Part shown: positions 1,195 to 53,790 of the stretch, in pieces
How positions within the stretch are numbered: position 1 is the first letter of the stretch
Layout of the letters: each line of letters starts with the position of its first letter
Virus record (IMG/VR): IMGVR_UViG_3300042934_000980
Coordinates: 156,496 to 220,495 of that record
Strand: one strand, 5' to 3'
DNA: 64,000 bases
The notes under the pieces: generated by a model
What the model saw: the letters and a program-made list of their open reading frames with translations, nothing else
Told to the model about the DNA's origin: nothing
Databases searched by the model: none
Program-made: the position numbers and the translations under genes

Positions 1195-1202
1195 GTAATA
1201 TA
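1195..1202 (-). promoter_or_regulatory. phiKZ-type early promoter core TATATTAC
   Basis: GTAATATA on + strand, intergenic, upstream of 566..1159; matches published phiKZ early consensus. Confidence 0.7.
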
Positions 1203-1246
1203 GGTCTAAGATGCTCTGTAAGTTAAAAATAAAAACACTGAATAAC

Positions 1247-20178: not shown

Positions 20179-20186
20179 GTAATATA
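20179..20186 (-). promoter_or_regulatory. early promoter core TATATTAC
   Basis: exact motif, intergenic. Confidence 0.7.
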
Positions 20187-20231
20187 GGTTTCAGATTGGC
20201 CAAGACCTCCCCTTATTAGGACGTCTTTACC

Positions 20232-23895: not shown

Positions 23896-23903
23896 GTAAT
23901 ATA
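23896..23903 (-). promoter_or_regulatory. early promoter core TATATTAC
   Basis: exact motif about 55 nt upstream of chaperonin. Confidence 0.7.
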
Positions 23904-23998
23904 GGTTTCAGATTTGCTTACAAAAAACAAAATGGCGGCATAGAGGTTAGGGACCTCCCCTCAAGCCTGTTGGCCCGACTAAAGGGGAGGGTGTTGCT

Positions 23999-24364
23999 CT
24001 ACGAAGCCTGGGCAGCCTTTTTGGACTGCCACGGTTCTTTCTGGACCAGGAAGAGAAGTTTTTCCTTGTTGTGCTCTTCAAACACAAACGCTGAGTCAGC
24101 GACAAAGCGGTGCGGTTCGGTAACCGAAATCAACACCTCAAAGTCAATGCCTTGCTCCAGGATATTCTCCACCTGCCCAATGCAGTCTTGGCTGTCCACG
24201 TCACCTTCTGGTTGCATGACCAGTAGCACTAAGCCGCTGTCGATCATCAACTTCAGGCGCTCGTACTGTTCAGGCTCAAGGACGTTGGGAACTTTAACGG
24301 TAATCATGGGGTCCTCAGGTAATATACCCGCCTCAGTGATGCAACAGTGAAAAGGGGTAACCAC
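23999..24364 (-). CDS. hypothetical protein
   Basis: 121 aa in operon. Confidence 0.65.
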   Translation of the reverse strand: MVTPFHCCITEAGILPEDPMITVKVPNVLEPEQYERLKLMIDSGLVLLVMQPEGDVDSQDCIGQVENILEQGIDFEVLISVTEPHRFVADSAFVFEEHNKEKLLFLVQKEPWQSKKAAQAS

Positions 24365-27663: not shown

Positions 27664-27671
27664 GTAATATA
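27664..27671 (-). promoter_or_regulatory. early promoter core TATATTAC
   Basis: exact motif, intergenic. Confidence 0.7.
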
Positions 27672-27691
27672 GGTTTGAAAACAACTGTAAC

Positions 27692-45012: not shown

Positions 45013-46389
45013 TTAGGCGGAATACATGTCGTCCCACGCGTGGTTTTTTGCACCGACATCACGCACCAATTGCTTGGCTTCGTCGATCAGCTGGATCACC
45101 TTCAGGCGCGACATCACCGACTCGGTCAGGTAGTTGGCAAAACTGCGGGTGATCGAGGTCTCAGCCACCGGGAAGCCTTCTTCGTCGATGGACATGACCC
45201 CTGAGATGACTTTGCGCACCTCCTCAATGGTGCAGTTAAGCTTAAGGCGCTGCAGGTTGTACACCGACGTCCCCAAGTCAAACTCGCGATTAGACGCACG
45301 CACCAGGAACATTTTGCTGGCGGGGGTGTCCAACGACAGGTAGTTGAACTTGTTGAGGATGTGGATGGTCTTGCCCGAGAACATCAGGTTGTTGAACACA
45401 CTGTACTTGATCAGCAGTTCAGCTTCCGAACGCACGGTGCAGCTACCCAAGTTGACGTTCTTAAGCGTCATGCGGGTGCCCGACAGAGTGGTCTTGTCCA
45501 GATAGGACCGACTAGCGCTGGTAAAGCCGCTGGCTTCGATGGTGCAGCGGTTGAACTGGCATTCCAGGTACGAACCTTGGGTGATCATCGAATTGACCAC
45601 CGTGGTGCGTTTGAATTGCGACTCCGACACAGTCGCTCGGGATTTGATCGATTCGATCTTTTTACCGCTTATTTCCCACGGCTTGTCCACTGCGTGGTCG
45701 GCAAAGAGACCGTTATACCCGTACCCGTGAGGCGTTACGACGTCTTCGGTTGCAATCAGCGCGCTGCTATTGAGCAGGTTCTTCTGGGAGATAACGTTGA
45801 TCAACGCCGCTTCCCCCACGACGGTGTCATCGGTGCTCGACGAGTTAACCAGCGCCATTATGCTTTTGCGTGCCGCTACTGAGCCACCTTCGAAACCAAA
45901 TCGGTTACGTCTATTTTCCTTGATGTTGAGTTCCACGCTCGATTCATCGTCGAGCAGGTAGTAGTTTTGGTTAACCCCCACCTTGACGCTGAACAGTTTG
46001 AATTCCCGGTCGCTTACCCGGTAGCCGTGAGTGCCTGGCAGGTGGATGGCCTCGCCCAGTTCTTTGATGTAGATGGAGGTGAGGTCGGTTTTGATGCCGG
46101 TGGCGATCGGTTCGATTTCAACGCCATCAACGGTGACAGTACCCAGCTTACGGTTCATACCACGCCCCGCTGCTTTAAGGATGCGTTCTGCGTTCTGGAT
46201 TTGGCGATCGGTTGGTGAAGCGTCAACAGGCTGGGCTTCTTCAACCTTGTGGGCCGCCCCTGGAAGCTTGATGGAGACAACGGTGTCATCCGGTTCACCG
46301 CCGAAGGCTTGCTTGACCTCAGGTGTTACAACAAGGTCTTTGACTTTGCCCGTGGTCACGGTGGCGGTTTTCTTTTCCGGTTTACTCAT
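45013..46389 (-). CDS. beta-helix/pentapeptide-like repeat protein
   Basis: 458 aa; repeats SQFKRTTVVNSMITQ..CQFNRCTIEAS; NKF and SRLKVI motifs shared with next gene. Confidence 0.7.
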   Translation of the reverse strand: MSKPEKKTATVTTGKVKDLVVTPEVKQAFGGEPDDTVVSIKLPGAAHKVEEAQPVDASPTDRQIQNAERILKAAGRGMNRKLGTVTVDGVEIEPIATGIKTDLTSIYIKELGEAIHLPGTHGYRVSDREFKLFSVKVGVNQNYYLLDDESSVELNIKENRRNRFGFEGGSVAARKSIMALVNSSSTDDTVVGEAALINVISQKNLLNSSALIATEDVVTPHGYGYNGLFADHAVDKPWEISGKKIESIKSRATVSESQFKRTTVVNSMITQGSYLECQFNRCTIEASGFTSASRSYLDKTTLSGTRMTLKNVNLGSCTVRSEAELLIKYSVFNNLMFSGKTIHILNKFNYLSLDTPASKMFLVRASNREFDLGTSVYNLQRLKLNCTIEEVRKVISGVMSIDEEGFPVAETSITRSFANYLTESVMSRLKVIQLIDEAKQLVRDVGAKNHAWDDMYSA

Positions 46390-48386
46390 TGTACTGCCCC
46401 TGTTTTGAGAATGGTGATGAGAGCGTCAATGCTCGATGCATCGGTTGCGTTGATCGTAGGAATACTGAGCTCGGTAGCCTTAAGTACTTTGCTCTGCCCC
46501 GCCTTTTCCCCGATCAACAGGTAGTTACAGTCTTTGGTCAATTTATCAACCAGCTCGATACCATGGTCGGCGAAGTAATCAATCAATTCTTCGCGCGATT
46601 GCCCCAAGGTGCCGGTGATGCACACCTTAAGTTCGTTGCTGGCCGGAACGGTGTAATCGATCTTGAGCAGATTGATCAACCCTACCGCATTGGTGACAAA
46701 GTCTTGGCTTTCAAAGCTTAGACTGATCGGGATGGCAATGCCTGCCGAAATCCCGGGAACCTTTTGCAGTTCTTGCGGTTTAGCCAGCCAGTCCAGCAAA
46801 CGCTGACCTTCGTGGTTTTGCTGCACCTGTTCCCACTTGGGGATGTGCGCTGCCAGTTTCTTGGCTCGCACCAAGTCCACGTTAGGTAAGCCCAACGCTT
46901 TGATCACCACATGCACCGGGACCGGGTTGTTCTTGATCGCTTGGATGCGCTCGTAAACTTTCTCCGGCACGGCGGTGAATGGCAGCAGTAAGACGTCCAT
47001 CGGGTATTGGATAAACTTGTTTTCCACCAACGCCGCCAACGTCACCGGACCCAGCCCGTCAATGTCCAACGTGCGCTTGTGCACCAGGTTAATGCACCGG
47101 CCGATCAGTTGCGCCGGGCAGTCGGTAAGGTTGGTGCAGATCAGGTCCGCACTTTGTTTACCCACCCGCACTTCCAATACACAGCCGCAGCTTGGGCAAT
47201 CTTCAGGGTGCTTAAGCACCGGGCCTTTACCACCCTCGATCACCCGGTTAAGCCGTGGGATAACGTCCCCGTTGCGGGTAATCCCCACCACCGACCCCTT
47301 ACGCAGCTCCAGCGCAATGAATTGCTTGTAGTTGTCCAGGTTCGCCCGGGTACAGGTCACACCCCCGATGATCACAGGACGGTAGAGAGCCACCGGAATA
47401 ACCCGCCCGGTTGCAGCTGTCGACCACACCACGTCTTCCAGCGTACTGACTTCTTCCACGTCTGGGAACTTGTACGCGATGCCCCAGTTGGGGTACCGGT
47501 TGTTGACCCCCAGCTCTTTTTGCAAGGCAAAGCTGTTGGCCCGCACCACCACCCCGTCCATGGGAACGTTTGGATGCCGTGCATTGTTCTTCATATCGTC
47601 GGGATGACGGATTTGTGGCGGAGCCATGAAGCCTTGGTTGATGCACCACGTGCGCTGCTCTTCATAGGTATCAAACCACACATCACTCATCCAGTAAGCG
47701 GCAAATTGCAACTTACCCATGATGGCTGGGTCTTGGTTATCCGGCAGGGCGCGGATCCAGCCGCTGACCGCGTTACGTGGGGTGGCCTTCTGTTTAACCG
47801 AAGTTTCGTTGTACCGGTGGAAGTCATCCAGCAGGACAAACGCTTCACCACGAATGGCGATGTCCACATCAAACAGTTCGCCGTTGTCACCTTTGAGCGT
47901 ACGGGGGATGTACGCAAAGAGTGGCAAGGCGTGCATGACGTCTTCACCAATCAACCCATCCCCTCGGGTGGCCATGGCTACCAATCTACCGCGGGTGTAG
48001 ACCAGCTCCAACGCCAACCCATCAATCTTGGCGTCTTTGAACAGTTGTTCGTCGGTCAGCTTCTTGCTTTCCTGCCACTTGTCCACCGCTTCCAGCGTCA
48101 GGGCCTTCTTAAGGCTCAGCATGGGGTGATCGAACTTTACCGCGGTCAAACCCTGGTTGGTCGGTTCATGGATCGGCACAGGCTTCTGAGCGGTCTCAAA
48201 CAGCTCGGCAATCTCGGGGTGGTTTTCAGCCAACACCTCAAAACGTTCCACCAGCTCGTCATAGACGTGGTTGGGGACCTCTTGGGTGTCTTTGTTAAAG
48301 TACAGGTCGGCGTGATGAGTGATCTGCCGGTTGAGGTCATGCATTTCCTCGTAGACAGTTTTGTATTCAGGTTTCATGGTGTTCAA
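46386..48386 (-). CDS. ligA: NAD-dependent DNA ligase
   Basis: HPMLSL, KIDG adenylation motif, ATRGDG..GEDV, AYKFP, CPSC/C..C zinc finger, HhH repeats, C-terminal BRCT. Confidence 0.95.
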   Translation of the reverse strand: MNTMKPEYKTVYEEMHDLNRQITHHADLYFNKDTQEVPNHVYDELVERFEVLAENHPEIAELFETAQKPVPIHEPTNQGLTAVKFDHPMLSLKKALTLEAVDKWQESKKLTDEQLFKDAKIDGLALELVYTRGRLVAMATRGDGLIGEDVMHALPLFAYIPRTLKGDNGELFDVDIAIRGEAFVLLDDFHRYNETSVKQKATPRNAVSGWIRALPDNQDPAIMGKLQFAAYWMSDVWFDTYEEQRTWCINQGFMAPPQIRHPDDMKNNARHPNVPMDGVVVRANSFALQKELGVNNRYPNWGIAYKFPDVEEVSTLEDVVWSTAATGRVIPVALYRPVIIGGVTCTRANLDNYKQFIALELRKGSVVGITRNGDVIPRLNRVIEGGKGPVLKHPEDCPSCGCVLEVRVGKQSADLICTNLTDCPAQLIGRCINLVHKRTLDIDGLGPVTLAALVENKFIQYPMDVLLLPFTAVPEKVYERIQAIKNNPVPVHVVIKALGLPNVDLVRAKKLAAHIPKWEQVQQNHEGQRLLDWLAKPQELQKVPGISAGIAIPISLSFESQDFVTNAVGLINLLKIDYTVPASNELKVCITGTLGQSREELIDYFADHGIELVDKLTKDCNYLLIGEKAGQSKVLKATELSIPTINATDASSIDALITILKTGAVQ

Positions 48387-48465
48387 GACCTTTGAAAAAT
48401 GAGAAAGCGGAATAAACCCTAGGTAACCGGGATAGGCCTAAACCTACCCCAGTCCCTAGGTCACT

Positions 48466-48906
48466 TCATGCACGGACTTTGTGACGCTCTGCGTGAATCT
48501 CAGCCAACAGCTTAAGGTCGATCATGTCCTGCTGGCGTTTGGCCAGTGGACGCTGGTGCTCGGCGTAACCGCCACGCTTTTGCAGGATCAACCCCATCAC
48601 GTCGAACACCTGGAAGCCCTCGATCACTTCGTGGTTAAACCACATGTTGCGCTGACGGATGTAGTACTTGGGGGTGGGGAGTTGAATGACCGTGTCACGC
48701 AGGGGGTGCACCAACACCTTGCAGTCTTCGGCCAAGCGCATGAACTGATCAGATTCGATCCACAGGTTCAGATCGTCCGTCGACTCACGCAACCCCATCA
48801 GGACCATTGCCGCGCCACCGCCGACGGTGATGTACTTGACAGGAACCTTGTGCTCGGCGCTGAAACGGTGGATGCCCTGAATAACTTCTTGCTTGTTGTT
48901 AAACAT
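48466..48906 (-). CDS. minimal nucleotidyltransferase-like protein (degenerate active site)
   Basis: VGGGAAMVLMGLRESTDDLN; second catalytic Asp replaced by Asn. Confidence 0.7.
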   Translation of the reverse strand: MFNNKQEVIQGIHRFSAEHKVPVKYITVGGGAAMVLMGLRESTDDLNLWIESDQFMRLAEDCKVLVHPLRDTVIQLPTPKYYIRQRNMWFNHEVIEGFQVFDVMGLILQKRGGYAEHQRPLAKRQQDMIDLKLLAEIHAERHKVRA

Positions 48907-49003
48907 AATGGAACCTTAAATGGATCGGTAGTGCGTCAGTAGAAGGGAGGTTGCGTGGGGTCGATACAAAGGTACTCAGTAAAGACAAGACCCCACCGAA
49001 CAG

Positions 49004-49441
49004 TTAAGCCATGCGTGCGGTCAACTTGGGAGAGCGCACCAGCGATTCAAGCTGGACAATCTCCATCAAGTCTTTCTCACGCTTGTTAGGGGCGCGGTTA
49101 GGCATGCTGGCCAAGTGGCGCTTTTGCAACAGCAGTTCATTAGGGCTGTACACCCAAACACCGTCGATACACACCACCCCAGTGTTGTCACTGAGTTCGT
49201 GCAGATCAACAAATTCGTTGTACGCCACCCGAGGACTTACATTCTCCTCGTGGATGACGTTGCGACTAATCGAAGCCCAGCGAAATACATTGCCGGGGAT
49301 ATCCACGTCCATGTCGTTGGTGCACGGGCGAACACCCATCATCACCAATGCCGAACCTGCACTCAGTACCACTCGGTGCGCCGGCTCGTTCAACTCCTTA
49401 ACTAACTTGTGGTACTCGCGGATCAACTGATCTTTGTTCAT
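49004..49441 (-). CDS. minimal pol-beta-type nucleotidyltransferase
   Basis: SAGSALVMMGVRPCTNDMDVD, VDLH, L.QK...R..KREKD. Confidence 0.8.
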   Translation of the reverse strand: MNKDQLIREYHKLVKELNEPAHRVVLSAGSALVMMGVRPCTNDMDVDIPGNVFRWASISRNVIHEENVSPRVAYNEFVDLHELSDNTGVVCIDGVWVYSPNELLLQKRHLASMPNRAPNKREKDLMEIVQLESLVRSPKLTARMA

Positions 49442-49853
49442 TGCTATTCTGCCTCGGCTGCATGATGATTAAGGCCGGGGCAACAGCCCTCAGCTTATTA
49501 AAAAATTGCGCTGCATCCCACTGGTTTACGCTCTTACGCACGTAAGGGGTAAACGGAGAACTCAAGATAAAGTTCTCAAAGGCAACCCGCAACATTTCAA
49601 ATTTGAAAGAGTGCGGGAAAGACGCACCGTTGTTCCGAATGCGTTCGACAGCGGTATCAACTCGAACCGCGTCTAAGGGGACGTCAACACCCCATTCCGG
49701 AAAACGTTTGCGAATAACAAAGTACCAAGTATCGTGTTCATTGACTAAGCCTAAGACCAGCGAGCTTTTGTCAGTGCAAGACCTAACTTCAAAAGTAAGG
49801 GAGTCGAAAGCCCCTTCTGACTCAGGGGCTTTCGAGCGACTGGAGACGTTCAT
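49398..49853 (-). CDS. hypothetical protein (start uncertain)
   Basis: 151-aa ORF, but 5' part contains a 12-bp terminator-like hairpin at 49804-49835. Confidence 0.45.
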   Translation of the reverse strand: MNVSSRSKAPESEGAFDSLTFEVRSCTDKSSLVLGLVNEHDTWYFVIRKRFPEWGVDVPLDAVRVDTAVERIRNNGASFPHSFKFEMLRVAFENFILSSPFTPYVRKSVNQWDAAQFFNKLRAVAPALIIMQPRQNSNEQRSVDPRVPQVS

Positions 49854-49854
49854 A

Positions 49855-50145
49855 TCAATGCAACGACACCGGCAGCTGAGGGACGGAGGTGATGTAGCGG
49901 ATCAGGTTCTCCACACTCCGTTGTGTGGTGAAGTCAGCCGCCGGGTTTAGCAAGGTGTAATTCAGAACTTGCGTGCCCGTTTCATCGAAGTTCACCACGG
50001 CTTGGTTGAAACCAAAGAACGTGATGATGGCGGTTTTGGGTTGAGTGGGATCGTTGTTCACGTTAACCGTGGCAACGCCTTCGCCAAGGTGGTTAGGTGC
50101 CAACGAGCCGTCGGGCTGTTGCGACACGTTGATCTGGTAGTTCAT
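49855..50145 (-). CDS. hypothetical (early) protein
   Basis: 96 aa, AAGGAG SD, TATATTAC upstream. Confidence 0.75.
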   Translation of the reverse strand: MNYQINVSQQPDGSLAPNHLGEGVATVNVNNDPTQPKTAIITFFGFNQAVVNFDETGTQVLNYTLLNPAADFTTQRSVENLIRYITSVPQLPVSLH

Positions 50146-50262: not shown

Positions 50263-50270
50263 GTAATATA
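50263..50270 (-). promoter_or_regulatory. early promoter core TATATTAC
   Basis: exact motif, intergenic. Confidence 0.7.
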
Positions 50271-50282
50271 GGTTTCAAAAAT

Positions 50283-52748
50283 TTAAGCGATGACACTGTT
50301 ACGGTTAACCTCACCCGGCATTGTCAGTCCCTCATAACGTAGGCCGATAATGTTGGGGTTGTCAAAGATCCCGTACTGGGCAATGTAGTGCGACACGATG
50401 AACAGCTGCTTGTGCGATTTGCTGCGGGTGTAGTCTTGAACGTAGTTAAAGAACCGCCCGCGGTTGATCTCGTCCAAGTTCACCCCCACCTCGTCCATGA
50501 TCAGTGGGTATTCGTCGGGGTAGTAATTGAGCATGACAAACCGGAACGTCCAGTCGATCAGGTCTCGTTCCCCTGCACTGCAATCGGTCACATCAGGGTT
50601 TGGGTCGCCTTCCCCCACCACCACTGGAAACTTGTAGGTCAAATCCCCGTTGGCCTTGGCGCACGGCTTGATAAAGAGTGTGGTGTTCCACACAGCCTTT
50701 AAGACCGCGTTCATGTTGGCGCACACCGCCTTGATGAAGTCGCCCATCAGTTTACCGATCACCCCCTTGTTGGGGCACAACCCGTCCTGACAGATCTCCA
50801 CAATCAACAGCCGGCGCTTCATGCGTTCGATGTCTTCGGAGATCGAGTTTACCACCGCCGTCAAGCTACGGTTTTTAATGATTGAGGTCATGTAGTCCTC
50901 TTTCTCAGAGGTGAGCATCATGATCCGGTCATCGACCTTCTGACGAAACTCATACTTGCCTTGGTTGGCCAAGCCCTTCATGATCTCTTCACGCAGACGA
51001 CGCAAAGTTTCCAAGTCGGTGTCGTAGGACAAAATAGCCGCCAGCTGGCGCTTCATCGATTCCACTTTACCGCGGTAGTAGGAGACCTTATTGTTCTCCT
51101 CGTGCAGCTCACGTTCCAAACCTTCCACGTACGAAGCCACAAACAGGACGTTGTTACGGTCCAGCAGGCCTATGCGAGTCTCCAGCAGGTTTTGTTCTTT
51201 GAGCAGCTCCGCTTTATGGCTCTTAAGCTTAGAGCGCTCCACGTAGCCTTGCAGAGCGTTTAACAACCGGTTGGTCTCAGCCTTACCGATCTCGTACTCG
51301 CGGATCAGTTGGGGCAGGATCTTGACGTGACCGTTTTCGCGCACAAACATGTACAGCTGGTTCATGCTCATGTACCAGTCGCTGTCGTTCTCGATCTTAG
51401 CCACCAGGTTCTTAAGCCGCTCTTCCATGCGCTCAATGTTCTTGTTCAAGGCATCGCGCCGGCCTTTAAGGTTGGCAATGTCCTGCGGGGTAATGCCGAT
51501 CTTGAACTTGTGCGTGCAGTCCGGACACTCCACCACTTCGGCCCGTTCATAGTGCTTGAGCTGGTGGGTCATGTCACTGGCTGTTTGCTTGGCTTGGCGA
51601 ATCTGGTTGGTCAGCTGCTCTTGTTCACGCAACCAGTCCTTGTACCCCGCGCCTGTCACTGAGGGGTCACTGGCCAAGGTCACCCGGTACAGGTAGCTTC
51701 TCAAGGTTTCATGGATCACTTCGATGTTGGCAAAGTCCGCTTCCGGGTCGTTAAACACCGGGTAGGCTTTGAGCAGCAGGTCGTGTTGCTCCAGCTGTTC
51801 ATTGATCTCCACCAATTCTTCGTTGATCTGCTTGGCTTGGCTTTTGAACACCTCAGGGTCTGCCAAGAACTCTTCCAAGCCTTCCAGTACCGAGGCGTTC
51901 TCAGCGATCGCCCCTTTGAGCACCAGGGCTTGGTCTTGGTGCAGGCTCATGAGGTTATTGTGGGTCTCAATGGCCGCTTCAAGTTCATGCCGGGTAAAGA
52001 TAAACCCGGACAGTTTGTTCACCGTCAGCTTATCGGTCAGCTGGGTGAACTCTTGGATGTGGTCGTTAACGCGCCGGTCCAACGTTACTCCATCCAGGCT
52101 GCCGCGCACCAACAAGCACTGACGCAGTTCCCCGTCCAGTAGCTTGATCCGGTTTTCCAACTCTTCCACGCCACACTCGGTGATGGTGGTCAGCTTGCGG
52201 TTCTCTTCGGTGTACCGGTTGATCTGGTTTTTGATCGCGCCCTTAAGGTCGTTACGCTCTTGGCGCAGCTTATTGAACACGTCCAAGGCGTAATCGGTGT
52301 TGTTGGGGTAGAGCTGCATGAACACGTCTTTGCGCCGCGCAGCACTCATGCCTGACAACAGGTCAGTCACCCGCAGGCCACTTAAGACCCGGTTAAGCCC
52401 CGGGTCCAAACGAAAGTAACTCTCGACCAGTTCTTTTTGTGAGGTGTAGGTGCCGCCGGTATTGAGCTCTTTACCGTTAAGCTTAAAACTGTGACCGTTA
52501 CCCATCCCGGTGTAAGAGTCCAGTACAAAGTGTTTGTTGCCCACTTTGCGTTCCACGTATTTGCGCCCACCGGCTTTGTAGTTTCCGTTCTCAGGCGGCA
52601 GCATGTTGAGTTCTTTCAGAATGCTCGTTTTACCCGTGCCGTTCTGAGAAATAAACAAGTTGATCATTTCATGGGTGTCAAGTTCCACCCGGTGAATTCC
52701 CTTACCCAGTAAAGGAATGTAGTTTTCCAGGATAAGTTTAAGTAACAT
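50283..52748 (-). CDS. sbcC: SbcC/Rad50-like SMC ATPase (phiKZ gp165-like)
   Basis: Walker A SQNGTGKT, coiled coil with CPDC hook, CSAGE signature, Walker B LIMDE, H-loop IVSH; start placed at MLLKL. Confidence 0.9.
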   Translation of the reverse strand: MLLKLILENYIPLLGKGIHRVELDTHEMINLFISQNGTGKTSILKELNMLPPENGNYKAGGRKYVERKVGNKHFVLDSYTGMGNGHSFKLNGKELNTGGTYTSQKELVESYFRLDPGLNRVLSGLRVTDLLSGMSAARRKDVFMQLYPNNTDYALDVFNKLRQERNDLKGAIKNQINRYTEENRKLTTITECGVEELENRIKLLDGELRQCLLVRGSLDGVTLDRRVNDHIQEFTQLTDKLTVNKLSGFIFTRHELEAAIETHNNLMSLHQDQALVLKGAIAENASVLEGLEEFLADPEVFKSQAKQINEELVEINEQLEQHDLLLKAYPVFNDPEADFANIEVIHETLRSYLYRVTLASDPSVTGAGYKDWLREQEQLTNQIRQAKQTASDMTHQLKHYERAEVVECPDCTHKFKIGITPQDIANLKGRRDALNKNIERMEERLKNLVAKIENDSDWYMSMNQLYMFVRENGHVKILPQLIREYEIGKAETNRLLNALQGYVERSKLKSHKAELLKEQNLLETRIGLLDRNNVLFVASYVEGLERELHEENNKVSYYRGKVESMKRQLAAILSYDTDLETLRRLREEIMKGLANQGKYEFRQKVDDRIMMLTSEKEDYMTSIIKNRSLTAVVNSISEDIERMKRRLLIVEICQDGLCPNKGVIGKLMGDFIKAVCANMNAVLKAVWNTTLFIKPCAKANGDLTYKFPVVVGEGDPNPDVTDCSAGERDLIDWTFRFVMLNYYPDEYPLIMDEVGVNLDEINRGRFFNYVQDYTRSKSHKQLFIVSHYIAQYGIFDNPNIIGLRYEGLTMPGEVNRNSVIA

Positions 52749-52794
52749 GATATAGTTTCTTTCAATGAAGTGTCTACAGAATGAGGTTTGAGGT

Positions 52795-53790
52795 ATGAAC
52801 TTAATCAACCACTTGGGGGTGGGCACCGTCGCGAGTACGAAGCAGACAGGCACCCATGAGATCATGGTGTACTTGCCAGGCTTTGCTCCGCAGGCCGATG
52901 GTCGAGTGGTGGCAACTGCTAAGGAAGTCGAAAAGACCAGCCAGAATGCTTACGGGGAAGAGACCAAGAGCAAGGTCTTAACCTCCAACACCTTTCCGGC
53001 TGAATGGCGAGCGATGGGCGACACCAACCGGGTTACGTCCCCGGATGTGCGTGAAGGCTCTCAAGTCTCTATCTACCAGGTCAGTGGGCAGAACAAGTAC
53101 TACTGGACCACGTGGGGCATCAACGCGGAAACCATGCGCCTTGAAACGGTGGTGATGGGCTTTCAAGCCAACCCCGCCCAAGGTGAGGACACCCCGTTTA
53201 ACATCGACAACTTCTACACCCTGACCGTCTCCACCCACGAAGGCTTTATGGCCTTGCGCACCACCCAGCAGAACAACGAGAAGACCACCTTTGAAGTCAA
53301 GGTCGACGCCATGAACGGCAAGATCATGATCGGCGGCGGTTACCGTAACTACTTAGTGTTTGACGACGTGGCGCGTTCGTTCACCTACAAGAACGCGGAC
53401 GAGTCGGTCTTTGACATCAACAAGAAAAAGATCACCGTGGTCTGCGAAGATTCGATTACCTTCGCCCCCAAAGAAACCTTCAGCATCAAAACCACCAACT
53501 TCAATCTGCTGTGCAACAAGATTGGGATTAAGGCGGATGAGGCTGACATTCATATTGGGGAGACCCGCTGGAACGGTAACATCATTCACACCGGTGATTA
53601 CGACCAGACAGGGGACTACACCCAAGCCGGCGACACTAACCGTACTGGCAACTCTACATCCACTGGGACGGTGATCGGGGCTAAAGGGGTCTTTACCGCC
53701 CTTAACAGCCTAGACGCTCACTTCCATGGCGGTGTGCGTACTGGCGATGGCACCACCAGCCAACCGGTACCTGGTACTGGCGCAGGGTAA
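52795..53790 (+). CDS. baseplate central spike / tail tip (gpV, phiKZ gp164-like)
   Basis: 6-residue beta-helix repeats TGDYDQTGDYTQAGD and apex HFH motif; divergent from SbcC as in phiKZ-like phages. Confidence 0.8.
   Translation: MNLINHLGVGTVASTKQTGTHEIMVYLPGFAPQADGRVVATAKEVEKTSQNAYGEETKSKVLTSNTFPAEWRAMGDTNRVTSPDVREGSQVSIYQVSGQNKYYWTTWGINAETMRLETVVMGFQANPAQGEDTPFNIDNFYTLTVSTHEGFMALRTTQQNNEKTTFEVKVDAMNGKIMIGGGYRNYLVFDDVARSFTYKNADESVFDINKKKITVVCEDSITFAPKETFSIKTTNFNLLCNKIGIKADEADIHIGETRWNGNIIHTGDYDQTGDYTQAGDTNRTGNSTSTGTVIGAKGVFTALNSLDAHFHGGVRTGDGTTSQPVPGTGAG

What the first reader, a model, noticed from the sequence alone, without database searches (positions are those of the whole stretch)
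48466..49441. Active plus pseudo-enzyme pair of minimal nucleotidyltransferases
Seen: two ~145-aa paralogs in tandem, downstream of an early promoter. 49004 keeps GS...R.T.DxD and a third Asp (VDLH). 48466 has GG...R.T.DLN and no third acid (YYIRQ). Both keep the L.QK...R..K...D C-terminal helix. Established: this G[GS]xA..G..RxTxDxD signature marks pol-beta NTases of the AbiEii/MenT/DUF6036 type, which modify tRNA ends or proteins. Inference: a catalytic subunit with a dead regulatory partner, used for tRNA repair or attack, NMPylation of host defence proteins, or decoy signal synthesis.
Basis: partly seen in the sequence, partly recalled or inferred. Interest (0 to 1): 0.65.

Follow-up and report, generated by a model that had tools for sequence, protein, structure and literature searches.

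The report
Phage mini-nucleotidyltransferase with fixed pseudo-enzyme paralog
A soil jumbo phage related to Pseudomonas phage EL carries two neighbouring 145-residue genes of an uncharacterised nucleotidyltransferase-fold family, one with a complete catalytic site and one whose site was rebuilt long ago and has been kept ever since. The two do not behave as an obligate pair, and what they act on is unknown.

Summary
Two minus-strand ORFs, A (49004-49441, 145 aa) and B (48466-48906, 146 aa), are paralogs: 26% identity, E 2e-12, both in PHROG 12854. Both fold with pLDDT about 96 into a minimal pol-beta nucleotidyltransferase fold. The nearest solved folds are TM1012, LnuA, ANT(2'')-Ia and MenT1/MenT3, at Z 9-10.

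A keeps G-S, R..T.D.D.D, D.H, K and D. B has D.N.W in place of D.D.D and a basic R.RN.YF strand in place of D.H, but keeps the K...R...K..D helix.

The Asp-to-Asn change is not an error. N and W stand in all 19 distinct B sequences found. B is one old clade, its dN/dS is 0.13-0.26, and contigs from four soil studies read the same.

The reading "catalytic subunit plus dead regulatory partner" is only partly supported. Syntenic EL-like loci show A without B, B beside A copies that have lost their own Asp residues, catalytically dead A alone, a third truncated paralog, and A replaced while B stayed 80% identical. The complex prediction gave no verdict.

This is a variable cassette of MenT/AbiEii-like mini-NTase-fold proteins between an SMC-like ATPase gene and the NAD-ligase gene. 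Substrate and role remain untested.

The parts
50263..50275 (-). Phage promoter-like motif AAACCTATATTAC, upstream of the first gene of the cassette.
   Evidence: It occurs 5 times in the window, all on the minus strand, against 0.43 expected. It aligns with the annotated EL promoter upstream of gp119. It matches the EL consensus WTTTYAAACCTACATTATY and the phiKZ core TATATTAC (PMC7058600).
49855..50145 (-). 96-aa ORF, ortholog of EL gp119. Function unknown. First gene of the cassette.
   Evidence: Synteny with EL. Orthologs in L027, L028 and L029 are 39-53% identical. No Pfam match.
49802..49837 (-). G+C-rich hairpin just after the gp119-like stop codon. A possible attenuator or terminator, lying inside the first codons of the next ORF.
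   Evidence: RNA fold of 49770-49860(-): -30.9 kcal/mol, z -3.0.
49398..49853 (-). 151-aa ORF of unknown function. It overlaps the start of A by 44 nt.
   Evidence: Homologs stand at the same position in L004, L005, L027 and L028, at 38-45% identity. It is absent from EL, L029 and L031. No Pfam match.
49004..49441 (-). A: minimal NTase-fold protein (145 aa) with a full catalytic signature. Ortholog of EL gp120.
   Evidence: 52% identical to EL gp120. AF2 model pLDDT 95.9. Nearest folds are TM1012, 5uvd, Megavirus PAP, LnuA, TglT/MenT3, ANT(2'') and MenT1, at Z 9.5-10.4. Family conservation of G29, R38, T41, D43, D45, D47, D79, H81, K107 and D124.
48907..49003 (-). 97-nt spacer between A and B. 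The same spacer is about 1-15 nt in the related loci that carry both genes.
   Evidence: No significant structure, z 0.12.
48466..48906 (-). B: paralogous NTase-fold protein (146 aa) with D-x-N-x-W and R-x-R-N-x-Y-F in place of the acidic motifs. Ortholog of EL gp121.
   Evidence: 39% identical to EL gp121. AF2 model pLDDT 96.3. Nearest folds are TM1012, MenT1, LnuA, 5uvd and ANT(2''), at Z 9.1-10.2, with TglT at 8.9. N47 and W49 are invariant. dN/dS is 0.13-0.26.
48418..48460 (-). Long (about 20-bp) hairpin followed by a U-rich tail, directly after the B stop codon. Terminator-like end of the cassette, ahead of the ligase gene.
   Evidence: RNA fold of 48378-48470(-): -34.3 kcal/mol, z -2.9.
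46386..48386 (-). NAD-dependent DNA ligase gene. Conserved downstream neighbour (context only).
   Evidence: Pfam DNA_ligase_aden at 6e-38, plus OB, BRCT and zinc-finger domains. A ligase stands in the same place in the EL-like loci that reach that far.
50283..52865 (-). SMC/Rad50-like ATPase gene (860 aa). Conserved upstream neighbour (context only).
   Evidence: Pfam SMC_N at 6e-08, below the curated cut-off. Ortholog of EL gp118. The same gene lies upstream in L027-L029 and L031.

Best explanation
The two genes are old paralogs of a phage-specific family of minimal (about 145 aa) nucleotidyltransferase-fold proteins. They sit in a promoter-to-terminator cassette between the SMC-like ATPase gene and the NAD-ligase gene of an EL-like jumbo phage from soil.

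A keeps every residue expected of a working MenT/AbiEii-like pol-beta NTase: the G-S turn, the T-x-D-x-D(-x-D) strand, a third acid on the neighbouring strand, and the lysine and aspartate of the C-terminal helices. A is therefore most likely a Mg-dependent enzyme that transfers an NMP from an NTP to a hydroxyl group. I rank an RNA 3' end (tRNA-like) as the first candidate acceptor and a small molecule as the second.

B keeps the fold, the first Asp and the Lys/Arg/Asp helix that would hold the NTP phosphates. It has replaced the central metal-binding Asp and its neighbours with an invariant Asn and Trp, and the third-acid strand with a basic R-x-R-N-x-Y-F strand. B is a selected pseudo-enzyme, most likely a binder of a nucleotide or other phosphate-bearing ligand rather than a transferase.

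The two proteins are not an obligate co-evolving pair. The locus is a variable cassette holding one to three paralogs, with catalytic residues lost more than once.

Shown here: paralogy, fold, motif states, conservation, selection, synteny and locus variability. Inferred: that A is catalytically active, that B is inactive, the nature of the acceptor, and any role in infection.
For: - Paralogy and family.
- Confident models and NTase-fold matches for both proteins.
- Related families by language-model and structure search are DUF6036, DUF2204, Aminoglyc_resit and AbiEii.
- Family-wide conservation across 113 sequences, in A numbering: G29 106, R38 109, T41 98, D43 103, D45 101, D47 82, D79 67 (Ser in 26), H81 96, K107 101, D124 111.
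- The pattern S/T-x-D, then K, then D matches the residues shown essential in MenT3 (S78, D80, K189, D211) and MenT4 (S67, D69, K171, D186) (PMC7450476), and the DxD plus catalytic-lysine description in PMC11375011.
- B-specific invariants: N47 and W49 in 14 of 14 sequences, and in all later ones.
- B forms a single clade with 100/97 support.
- dN/dS where dS is unsaturated: B 0.13-0.26, A 0.08-0.21.
- Identical sequence in contigs of four soil studies.
- Separability of A and B: L005 has A without B. L027 and L029 have only a dead A. L028 has dead A plus C plus B. L030 and L031 have an A lacking D43, D79 and H81, plus B. Between L006 and L014, B is 80% identical, A 37%, ligase 48% and the ATPase 50%.
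- Nucleic-acid context: SMC-like ATPase, NAD ligase and RNase H in the window, and DnaB nearby in the RP12-like phages.
Against: - No enzymatic or binding data exist.
- No Pfam family reaches its threshold, and no solved structure is found by sequence. Residue equivalence with MenT rests on motif pattern, not on a superposition I could inspect.
- A clade of A orthologs that lost all three Asp residues has persisted as intact genes. The function under selection at this locus may therefore not be catalysis at all.
- A is near neutral overall (mean pI 6.1), unlike the electropositive MenT toxins. This does not favour tRNA binding.
- A fusion of this domain to a GNAT acetyltransferase in phiKZ-like contigs, together with equal fold scores for LnuA and ANT(2''), fits a small-molecule or protein acceptor as well as an RNA one.
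- B could still be an enzyme with a non-canonical site.
Confidence: 0.5

Rival explanations
1. A and B form a heterodimer in which B, a dead paralog, regulates or targets the catalytic subunit A. It would parallel the way AbiEi and MenA antitoxins bind and control DUF1814 NTase toxins.
For: - A and B are adjacent and co-oriented in 17 of 20 EL-like loci examined, between one promoter-like motif and one terminator-like hairpin.
- B keeps the fold and the NTP-side helix.
- My fold searches place the non-catalytic AbiEi antitoxin (6y8q, Z 8.3 and 7.7) and Rv2827c (1zel, Z 6.6 and 6.5) among the structural neighbours of both models.
- A 2026 preprint shows the AbiEi C-terminal domain binding across the AbiEii active-site face.
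- Giant-virus poly(A) polymerases are also among the neighbours.
Against: - A occurs without B in L005 and the Ralstonia phages.
- B occurs beside A copies that lack catalytic Asp residues (L028, L030, L031).
- Dead A occurs alone (L027, L029).
- A and B histories disagree: between L006 and L014, B is 80% identical and A 37%, and the A genes of L014-L016 belong to another clade.
- No fused A-B protein was found among 13 longer relatives.
- Adjacent paralogs arise by tandem duplication whether or not they bind each other. L024 and L025 carry an independent duplication in which both copies keep DxDxD.
Confidence: 0.2
2. Catalysis is not the selected function of either protein. Both are ligand- or protein-binding modules of an accessory counter-defence cassette, for example nucleotide sponges, decoys or inhibitors of host NTase-type systems. 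A's intact site would then be ancestral baggage, or serve only for binding.
For: - Catalytic Asp residues were lost at least three times: in B, in the A-dead clade, and in the S-D-D clade that lacks D79 and H81. In each case the ORF, the fold residues and the K...D helix were retained.
- Copy number varies from one to three, and a truncated paralog C exists.
- B's alternative motif is strictly invariant.
Against: - D43, D45 and D47 are all kept in the 14 EL-like A orthologs of DDD type and in 16 of 16 close A orthologs aligned from the protein search, and D43 and D45 in about 90% of the wider family. This implies selection on the metal site in most lineages.
- dN/dS of A is low.
- No ligand or target is known.
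Confidence: 0.15
3. A is a small-molecule O-nucleotidyltransferase of the ANT(2'')/LnuA kind. It would inactivate anti-phage or antibacterial metabolites that a soil phage and its host encounter. B would be a binding paralog.
For: - LnuA (Z 9.8) and ANT(2'')-Ia (Z 9.5) tie with the best structural neighbours, and Foldseek ranks ANT(2'') among its top hits.
- Atlas neighbours carry PF10706 Aminoglyc_resit.
- The family domain is fused to a GNAT acetyltransferase in phiKZ-like contigs.
- The size is similar (145 aa against 158-177 aa), A is near neutral, and the phage comes from soil.
Against: - There is no Pfam match to the antibiotic NTase families.
- The gene context is nucleic-acid enzymes, not resistance or metabolism.
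- The GNAT parts of the fusions weakly resemble protein N-terminal acetyltransferases, not aminoglycoside acetyltransferases.
- The T-x-D-x-D, K, D pattern fits DUF1814 toxins at least as well.
Confidence: 0.1
4. B is a decaying duplicate or a sequencing error, with no function.
For: B evolves somewhat faster than A: mean pairwise identity is 41% against 49.5%. A gene caller shortened B to 108 aa.
Against: - B is a full-length ORF in 19 distinct sequences, all with invariant N and W.
- dN/dS is 0.13-0.26, and 0.04 for L006 against L014, where dS is saturated.
- The model is confident, at pLDDT 96.3.
- The sequence is identical in independent contigs.
Confidence: 0.02

Closest known systems
DUF1814 NTase toxins: AbiEii, MenT1, MenT3/TglT, MenT4
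   Same: Same pol-beta NTase fold: Z 9.5 to MenT1 and to TglT, 6.9 to MenT4. Same order of key residues: Ser/Thr two positions before the first Asp of DxD, then a lysine and an aspartate in the C-terminal helices (PMC7450476, PMC11375011). These toxins are controlled by a bound non-catalytic partner.
   Different: The window proteins are about 145 aa, against 190-300 aa with a second lobe. They give no PF08843 match. No AbiEi or MenA-type antitoxin gene lies next to them. They are encoded by a lytic jumbo phage, not a host TA locus. A is not markedly basic. tRNA activity and toxicity are untested.
ANT(2'')-Ia and LnuA antibiotic nucleotidyltransferases; TM1012
   Same: These are the best-scoring solved folds, and are also small single-domain proteins: TM1012 Z 10.4, LnuA 9.8, ANT(2'') 9.5. 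Atlas neighbours carry PF10706.
   Different: Sequence identity is only 13-16%. There is no Pfam match and no resistance context. The function of TM1012 is itself unknown.
Pfam DUF6036 (PF19502) and DUF2204 (PF09970)
   Same: DUF6036 is the only Pfam NTase family hit at all: B at E 0.052, and 4 of 113 relatives down to E 0.0012. The nearest Atlas clusters carry these families.
   Different: All scores are below the curated cut-off. DUF6036 is itself uncharacterised.
EL gp120/gp121 and PHROG 12854
   Same: Direct orthologs in the same gene order, between gp119 and the NAD ligase gp122. Both window proteins match phrog_12854.
   Different: These genes are annotated only as hypothetical proteins. 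I found no paper on them, but my paper search for them was poorly aimed and returned only unrelated hits.
AbiEi antitoxin C-terminal domain and Rv2827c
   Same: Non-catalytic proteins that my fold searches place among the neighbours of both models (Z 8.3/7.7 and 6.6/6.5). AbiEi binds and neutralises an NTase.
   Different: They carry an N-terminal winged-helix DNA-binding domain and are host-encoded. The similarity is moderate, aligning 108-112 residues. No sequence relationship was detected.
Giant-virus and poxvirus poly(A) polymerases
   Same: Viral NTases whose catalytic region aligns over almost the whole A model: Megavirus PAP Z 9.8 with 142 residues aligned, plus BFVD hits.
   Different: They are 450-500 aa multi-domain enzymes of eukaryotic viruses. 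There is no evidence that this phage polyadenylates RNA.

Membership tests
Pol-beta superfamily nucleotidyltransferase fold | Alpha-beta-alpha-beta core fold shared with solved NTases. | tested here: met
   Both models (pLDDT 95.9 and 96.3) match TM1012, LnuA, ANT(2''), MenT1 and TglT at Z 8.9-10.4 over 118-138 residues. Foldseek E-values are 1e-4 to 1e-2.
Pol-beta superfamily nucleotidyltransferase fold | hG[GS] turn followed, 9-13 residues later, by a [DE]h[DE]h strand that binds the metals. | tested here: met
   Met for A: A-G29-S30, then 12 residues, then D43-M-D45-V. Not met for B, which has G-G-G-A and then D45-L-N47-L. Asn is invariant in B.
Pol-beta superfamily nucleotidyltransferase fold | Third carboxylate on a neighbouring strand. 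| tested here: inconclusive
   A has V-D79-L-H on strand 78-82 of the model. Across the family, D79 is Asp in only 67 of 113 sequences and Ser in 26. I could not inspect side-chain geometry. B has no acid there (Y-Y-I-R).
DUF1814 / AbiEii / MenT toxins (PF08843) | Match to the family profile. | tested here: not met
   No PF08843 hit for either protein even at E 10. None of 113 relatives hit it at E 0.01. AbiEii appears only among Atlas neighbour clusters.
DUF1814 / AbiEii / MenT toxins (PF08843) | Ser/Thr-x-Asp pol-beta motif plus a toxin-specific Lys and Asp (MenT3 S78, D80, K189, D211). | tested here: inconclusive
   A has T41-x-D43, K107 and D124, and B has T43-x-D45, K110 and D127, in the same order with similar spacing. 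The equivalence is by pattern only. No residue-level superposition was available.
DUF1814 / AbiEii / MenT toxins (PF08843) | Adjacent cognate antitoxin gene (AbiEi/COG5340 or MenA type). | tested here: not met
   The upstream ORFs (96 aa and 151 aa) and the downstream ligase gene have no such domain. The only neighbour of the NTase kind is the paralog itself.
DUF1814 / AbiEii / MenT toxins (PF08843) | Growth toxicity and nucleotide addition to tRNA 3' ends. | not testable with these tools
   This needs expression and labelling assays.
DUF6036 (PF19502) | Score above Pfam's gathering threshold. | tested here: not met
   B scores 13.8 bits against a cut-off of 23.6 (E 0.052). A gives no hit.
ANT(2'')/LnuA antibiotic NTases (PF10706 and relatives) | Profile match, and activity on aminoglycosides or lincosamides. 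| tested here: not met
   There is no Pfam hit. Only fold similarity and Atlas neighbours point this way. Activity is not testable here.
HEPN-MNT minimal NTase pairs | A minimal NTase gene next to a HEPN-domain gene. | tested here: not met
   No HEPN or NTP_transf_2 match in either protein or in the flanking ORFs. No PADLOC model matched.
PHROG 12854 (phage proteins of unknown function) | Profile match over the full length. | tested here: met
   A: E 1.1e-30 over residues 1-133. B: E 2.7e-24 over residues 4-143.

The most novel reading that the evidence does not exclude
B-type proteins, and the Asp-less A-type proteins that stand alone in some EL-like phages, are phage-made mimics of the NTase-like neutralising domain of AbiEi/MenA-type antitoxins. 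They would bind host DUF1814 (AbiEii/MenT) abortive-infection toxins, or another host NTase-type defence enzyme, and keep them switched off during infection. The catalytically intact A copy would be the ancestral enzyme from which these inhibitors were repeatedly derived.
Probability: 0.07. Interest if true: 0.8.

Novelty: new variant of a known kind. Interest (0 to 1): 0.5.

Why it matters
Nucleus-forming jumbo phages carry many genes of unknown function. This work gives two of them, EL gp120 and gp121 and their relatives, a confident fold and a clear family signature.

The locus is also a natural series of states: intact enzyme, fixed pseudo-enzyme, independently inactivated copies and a truncated copy, all at one position in the genome. 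That makes it a compact system for asking how a nucleotidyltransferase turns into a binding protein.

It also offers a route to learning whether phages use MenT/AbiEii-like chemistry, or mimic its regulators, against their hosts. If A modifies RNA ends, or B blocks a host NTase toxin, either would be a new kind of phage counter-defence or host-takeover tool. If neither holds, the pair is one more accessory duplication.

Tried and rejected
- **Near-identity DNA search of phage records:** no match. The window is an IMG/VR virus record of 220,495 bases.
- **NCBIfam and PADLOC:** nothing meaningful.
- **Profile searches of PDB sequences with 22- and 113-row alignments:** no NTase hit.
- **The search for related loci with the broad alignment, and in genome contigs:** Bacterial genome context was therefore not surveyed.
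- **Complex prediction of A with B:** ipSAE 0.00 in both runs, verdict 'no answer'. I count it neither for nor against binding.
- **Search for A-B fusion proteins among 13 longer relatives:** none. Extra domains were GNAT in two proteins and unidentified in the rest.
- **Paper searches for EL gp120/gp121 and for DUF6036:** nothing relevant. A jumbo-phage comparative genomics paper mentions RlaP, CCA-adding and Thg1 NTases but not this family.
- **GNAT parts of the fusion proteins:** only weak matches to generic N-terminal acetyltransferases, so they do not identify a substrate.
- **Net charge and pI:** did not discriminate between substrates.
- **RNA runs:** none on record for this phage, so expression and promoter timing could not be checked.
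- **The 97-nt A-B spacer:** no significant structure.
- **Rejected: B as a pseudogene or an error.** See the rival explanations.
- **Rejected: one loss of activity for the whole locus.** The tree shows B and the A-dead clade as separate events.
Full report
**What is in the window.** The finding's coordinates hold two ORFs on the minus strand. A is 49004-49441 (145 aa) and lies upstream. B is 48466-48906 (146 aa). BLASTP aligns them at 26% identity over 130 residues, E 2e-12. Both match one PHROG of unknown function, phrog_12854, at E 1e-30 and 3e-24.
- A reads A-G-S, R38, T41, D43-M-D45-V-D47, V-D79-L-H81, Q-K107, R116, K120, D124.
- B reads G-G-G-A, R40, T43, D45-L-N47-L-W49, then Y-Y-I-R-Q-R-N where A has V-D-L-H, then Q-K110, R119, K123, D127.

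**The genome.** The window is the last 64 kb of an IMG/VR virus record of 220,495 bases, estimated 96% complete. It holds only these two family members. tblastn finds the nearest annotated relatives in Pseudomonas phage EL and its kin: gp120 is 52% identical to A and gp121 is 39% identical to B. Single copies occur in the Ralstonia phages RP12, RP31 and FLC and in two other Pseudomonas jumbo phages. Gene order is the same as in EL: gp118 (SMC-like ATPase), gp119, gp120, gp121, then NAD-dependent ligase gp122, with RNase H further on. Contigs from soil metagenomes of four studies carry the same sequence over both genes. The only difference is an A>G at 49505, outside them. Some of those runs may be the source of the record.

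**Transcription signals.** A 13-base motif, AAACCTATATTAC, lies at 50263-50275 on the minus strand, just upstream of the gp119-like ORF. It occurs five times in the window, always on the minus strand, against 0.43 expected. It aligns with the promoter annotated at the same place in EL. It also fits the published EL consensus and the phiKZ TATATTAC core (PMC7058600). That the phiKZ motif marks early genes is my recollection of the phiKZ literature and was not tested here. A strong hairpin follows the gp119-like stop (z -3.0). A long hairpin with a U-rich tail follows the B stop (z -2.9). The 97-nt A-B spacer is unstructured. The cassette therefore reads: promoter-like motif, gp119-like ORF, hairpin, 151-aa ORF, A, B, terminator-like hairpin, ligase.

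**Fold.** Exhaustive HMMER search with A found 200 representative clusters at E 0.001 or better, mostly standalone proteins of 130-150 aa. With a 113-row alignment, AlphaFold2 gives A a mean pLDDT of 95.9. With 125 rows, B gets 96.3.

| Search | Query | Nearest matches |
|---|---|---|
| VIA-align against 48,161 PDB chains | A | TM1012 Z 10.4, 5uvd 10.1, Megavirus poly(A) polymerase 9.8, LnuA 9.8, TglT/MenT3 9.5, ANT(2'')-Ia 9.5, MenT1 9.5, AbiEi 8.3, MenT4 6.9 |
| VIA-align against 48,161 PDB chains | B | The same set of families, without the giant-virus polymerases, in a slightly different order |
| Foldseek against PDB | A | Agrees with the above |
| BFVD viral models | A | RP12, EL gp121, 201phi2-1, PhiEaH1, RSF1, Noxifer, Phabio |
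| ESM Atlas | A and B | Own cluster is 98% viral; neighbours carry DUF6036, DUF2204, Aminoglyc_resit and AbiEii |

The BFVD hits are, by my own knowledge of these phages, mostly phiKZ-like jumbo phages. The fold is therefore common in that group.

By sequence, no Pfam family reaches its threshold. The best hit is DUF6036 for B, at E 0.052. No solved structure is found by sequence. Membership of a named family is not shown.

**The catalytic signature.** Counts across 113 family sequences are given in the Best explanation section. The order Thr-x-Asp-x-Asp, then Lys, then Asp mirrors the residues shown essential in MenT3 (S78, D80, K189, D211) and MenT4 (S67, D69, K171, D186) (PMC7450476). It also mirrors the DxD plus catalytic-lysine description of DUF1814 enzymes (PMC11375011). 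The equivalence is by pattern only, because I could not inspect a superposition. On this basis A looks competent. B lacks the central Asp and the third-acid strand.

**Is the Asp-to-Asn change real and conserved?** Yes. I collected B orthologs from 12 IMG/VR jumbo-phage contigs, from EL, from three further metagenome contigs and from two database proteins. That gives 19 distinct sequences.
- All 19 have D-x-N-x-W.
- In the first 14 aligned, R40, K110, D127 and D130 are also invariant, and N87 is nearly so.
- B forms a single clade with 100/97 support, outside all A-type and other family sequences sampled.
- dN/dS for B is 0.13-0.26 where dS is unsaturated, close to A's 0.08-0.21.

B is therefore a long-lived protein under selection, with a rebuilt pocket. 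It is not a decaying copy.

**Is it a catalytic-plus-regulatory pair?** Here the evidence turns against the simple reading. I examined 20 syntenic EL-like loci.

| State of the locus | Loci | Which |
|---|---|---|
| A with D-D-D, plus B | 14 | window, EL, L004, L006-L016 |
| A with D-D-D, a truncated paralog C, no B | 1 | L005 |
| A lacking D43, D79 and H81, plus B | 2 | L030, L031 |
| A with none of the three Asp, plus C, plus B | 1 | L028 |
| Asp-less A alone | 2 | L027, L029 |

- The three Asp-less A proteins form one clade (99/94 support) nested inside the EL-like A clade. This loss of activity is separate from the one in B, and it has persisted in intact genes.
- Between L006 and L014, B is 80% identical with saturated dS. 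A is 37%, the ligase 48% and the ATPase 50% identical. The A genes of L014-L016 belong to a different clade.
- An unrelated jumbo-phage lineage duplicated the gene independently, with both copies keeping D-L-D-V-D, and in one contig the second copy is truncated.
- None of 13 longer relatives is an A-B fusion.
- The complex prediction gave no verdict, and I do not count it either way.

Together, these results describe a variable cassette of one to three paralogs, not a fixed two-subunit enzyme.

**What it may act on.**
- For an RNA or nucleic-acid acceptor: the MenT-like residue pattern, the flanking nucleic-acid enzymes with DnaB near the single-copy genes, and Atlas structural neighbours in which a similar domain is fused to RNase HII or RNase III.
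- For a small-molecule or protein acceptor: the equal fold scores of LnuA and ANT(2''), the PF10706-bearing neighbours, a fusion of the family domain to a GNAT acetyltransferase inside phiKZ-like contigs, and the near-neutral charge of A.

I rank RNA 3' ends first and small molecules second. The tools cannot decide between them.

**Precedent for a non-catalytic partner.** My fold searches place the AbiEi antitoxin and Rv2827c among the neighbours of both models. A 2026 preprint shows the AbiEi C-terminal domain binding across the active-site face of AbiEii and inducing its auto-phosphorylation. MenA antitoxins do the same to MenT toxins at the Ser/Thr that precedes the DxD. It also suggests the most novel reading not excluded: phage B-type proteins could mimic such antitoxin domains to silence host NTase toxins.

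**Verdict.** The family assignment is right at the fold level. The 'dead partner' is real, but it is better described as a fixed pseudo-enzyme with its own conserved pocket. An obligate regulatory pairing is not supported by the comparative data. The family is uncharacterised in every library and paper text that I searched. I class it as a new variant of a known kind, of moderate interest.

Noticed in passing
window 49398-49853 (-): A 151-aa ORF of unknown function lies between the gp119-like gene and A and overlaps A's start by 44 nt. Homologs stand at the same place in L004, L005, L027 and L028, but not in EL, L029 or L031. Its first codons contain a strong hairpin.
   Followed up: partly
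window 1195-1207, 20179-20191, 23896-23908, 27664-27676, 50263-50275 (all -): Five copies of the promoter-like motif A(A/G)ACCTATATTAC, all on the minus strand, each preceded by a T-rich stretch. This is probably the phage's own promoter class. A sixth TATATTAC at 24319 lacks the extended motif.
   Followed up: partly
L004 4965-5333; L005 4470-4877; L028 3473-3793: A third, truncated and acidic paralog ('C', 106-135 aa) of the same fold family. The family HMM detects it at E 8e-6 to 7e-9. It lacks the G-S turn, the R..T.D.D motif and the C-terminal helices. The window has no such copy.
   Followed up: partly
L024 4001-5013; L025 235-1247; L023 4001-4755: An independent tandem duplication of the family in another jumbo-phage lineage. 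Both copies (169 and 168 aa) keep D-L-D-V-D. In L023 the second copy is cut to 82 aa.
   Followed up: partly
L020, L021, L022 4001-4849: A 282-aa fusion of the family domain (D-I-D-A-A variant) to a GNAT acetyltransferase. It lies in contigs that also carry a phiKZ inner-body protein gene and a tail-tube gene.
   Followed up: partly
L006 vs L014, 4454-4955: B is 80% identical between two phages whose ligase, ATPase, gp119-like and A proteins are only 37-50% identical. dS is saturated, so this reflects strong constraint or an old exchange, not a recent transfer.
   Followed up: partly
window 48466-48906 (-): The public protein collection holds B only as a 108-aa product (P0023), called from an internal start. 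The conserved N-terminal helix in all orthologs supports the 146-aa form.
   Followed up: yes
window 48907-49003: The A-B spacer is 97 nt here but about 1-15 nt in the related loci that carry both genes. It has no significant fold and no detected repeat.
   Followed up: partly
window 48400-49900: The phage turns up in soil metagenomes of at least four studies with essentially identical sequence. The one difference is an A>G at 49505. No RNA run on record holds it.
   Followed up: yes
models of A and B: The AbiEi antitoxin (6y8q, residues 57-173) and Rv2827c (1zel) score as structural neighbours of the NTase-fold models, at Z 6.5-8.3. These antitoxins may therefore contain an NTase-like non-catalytic domain.
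   Followed up: partly
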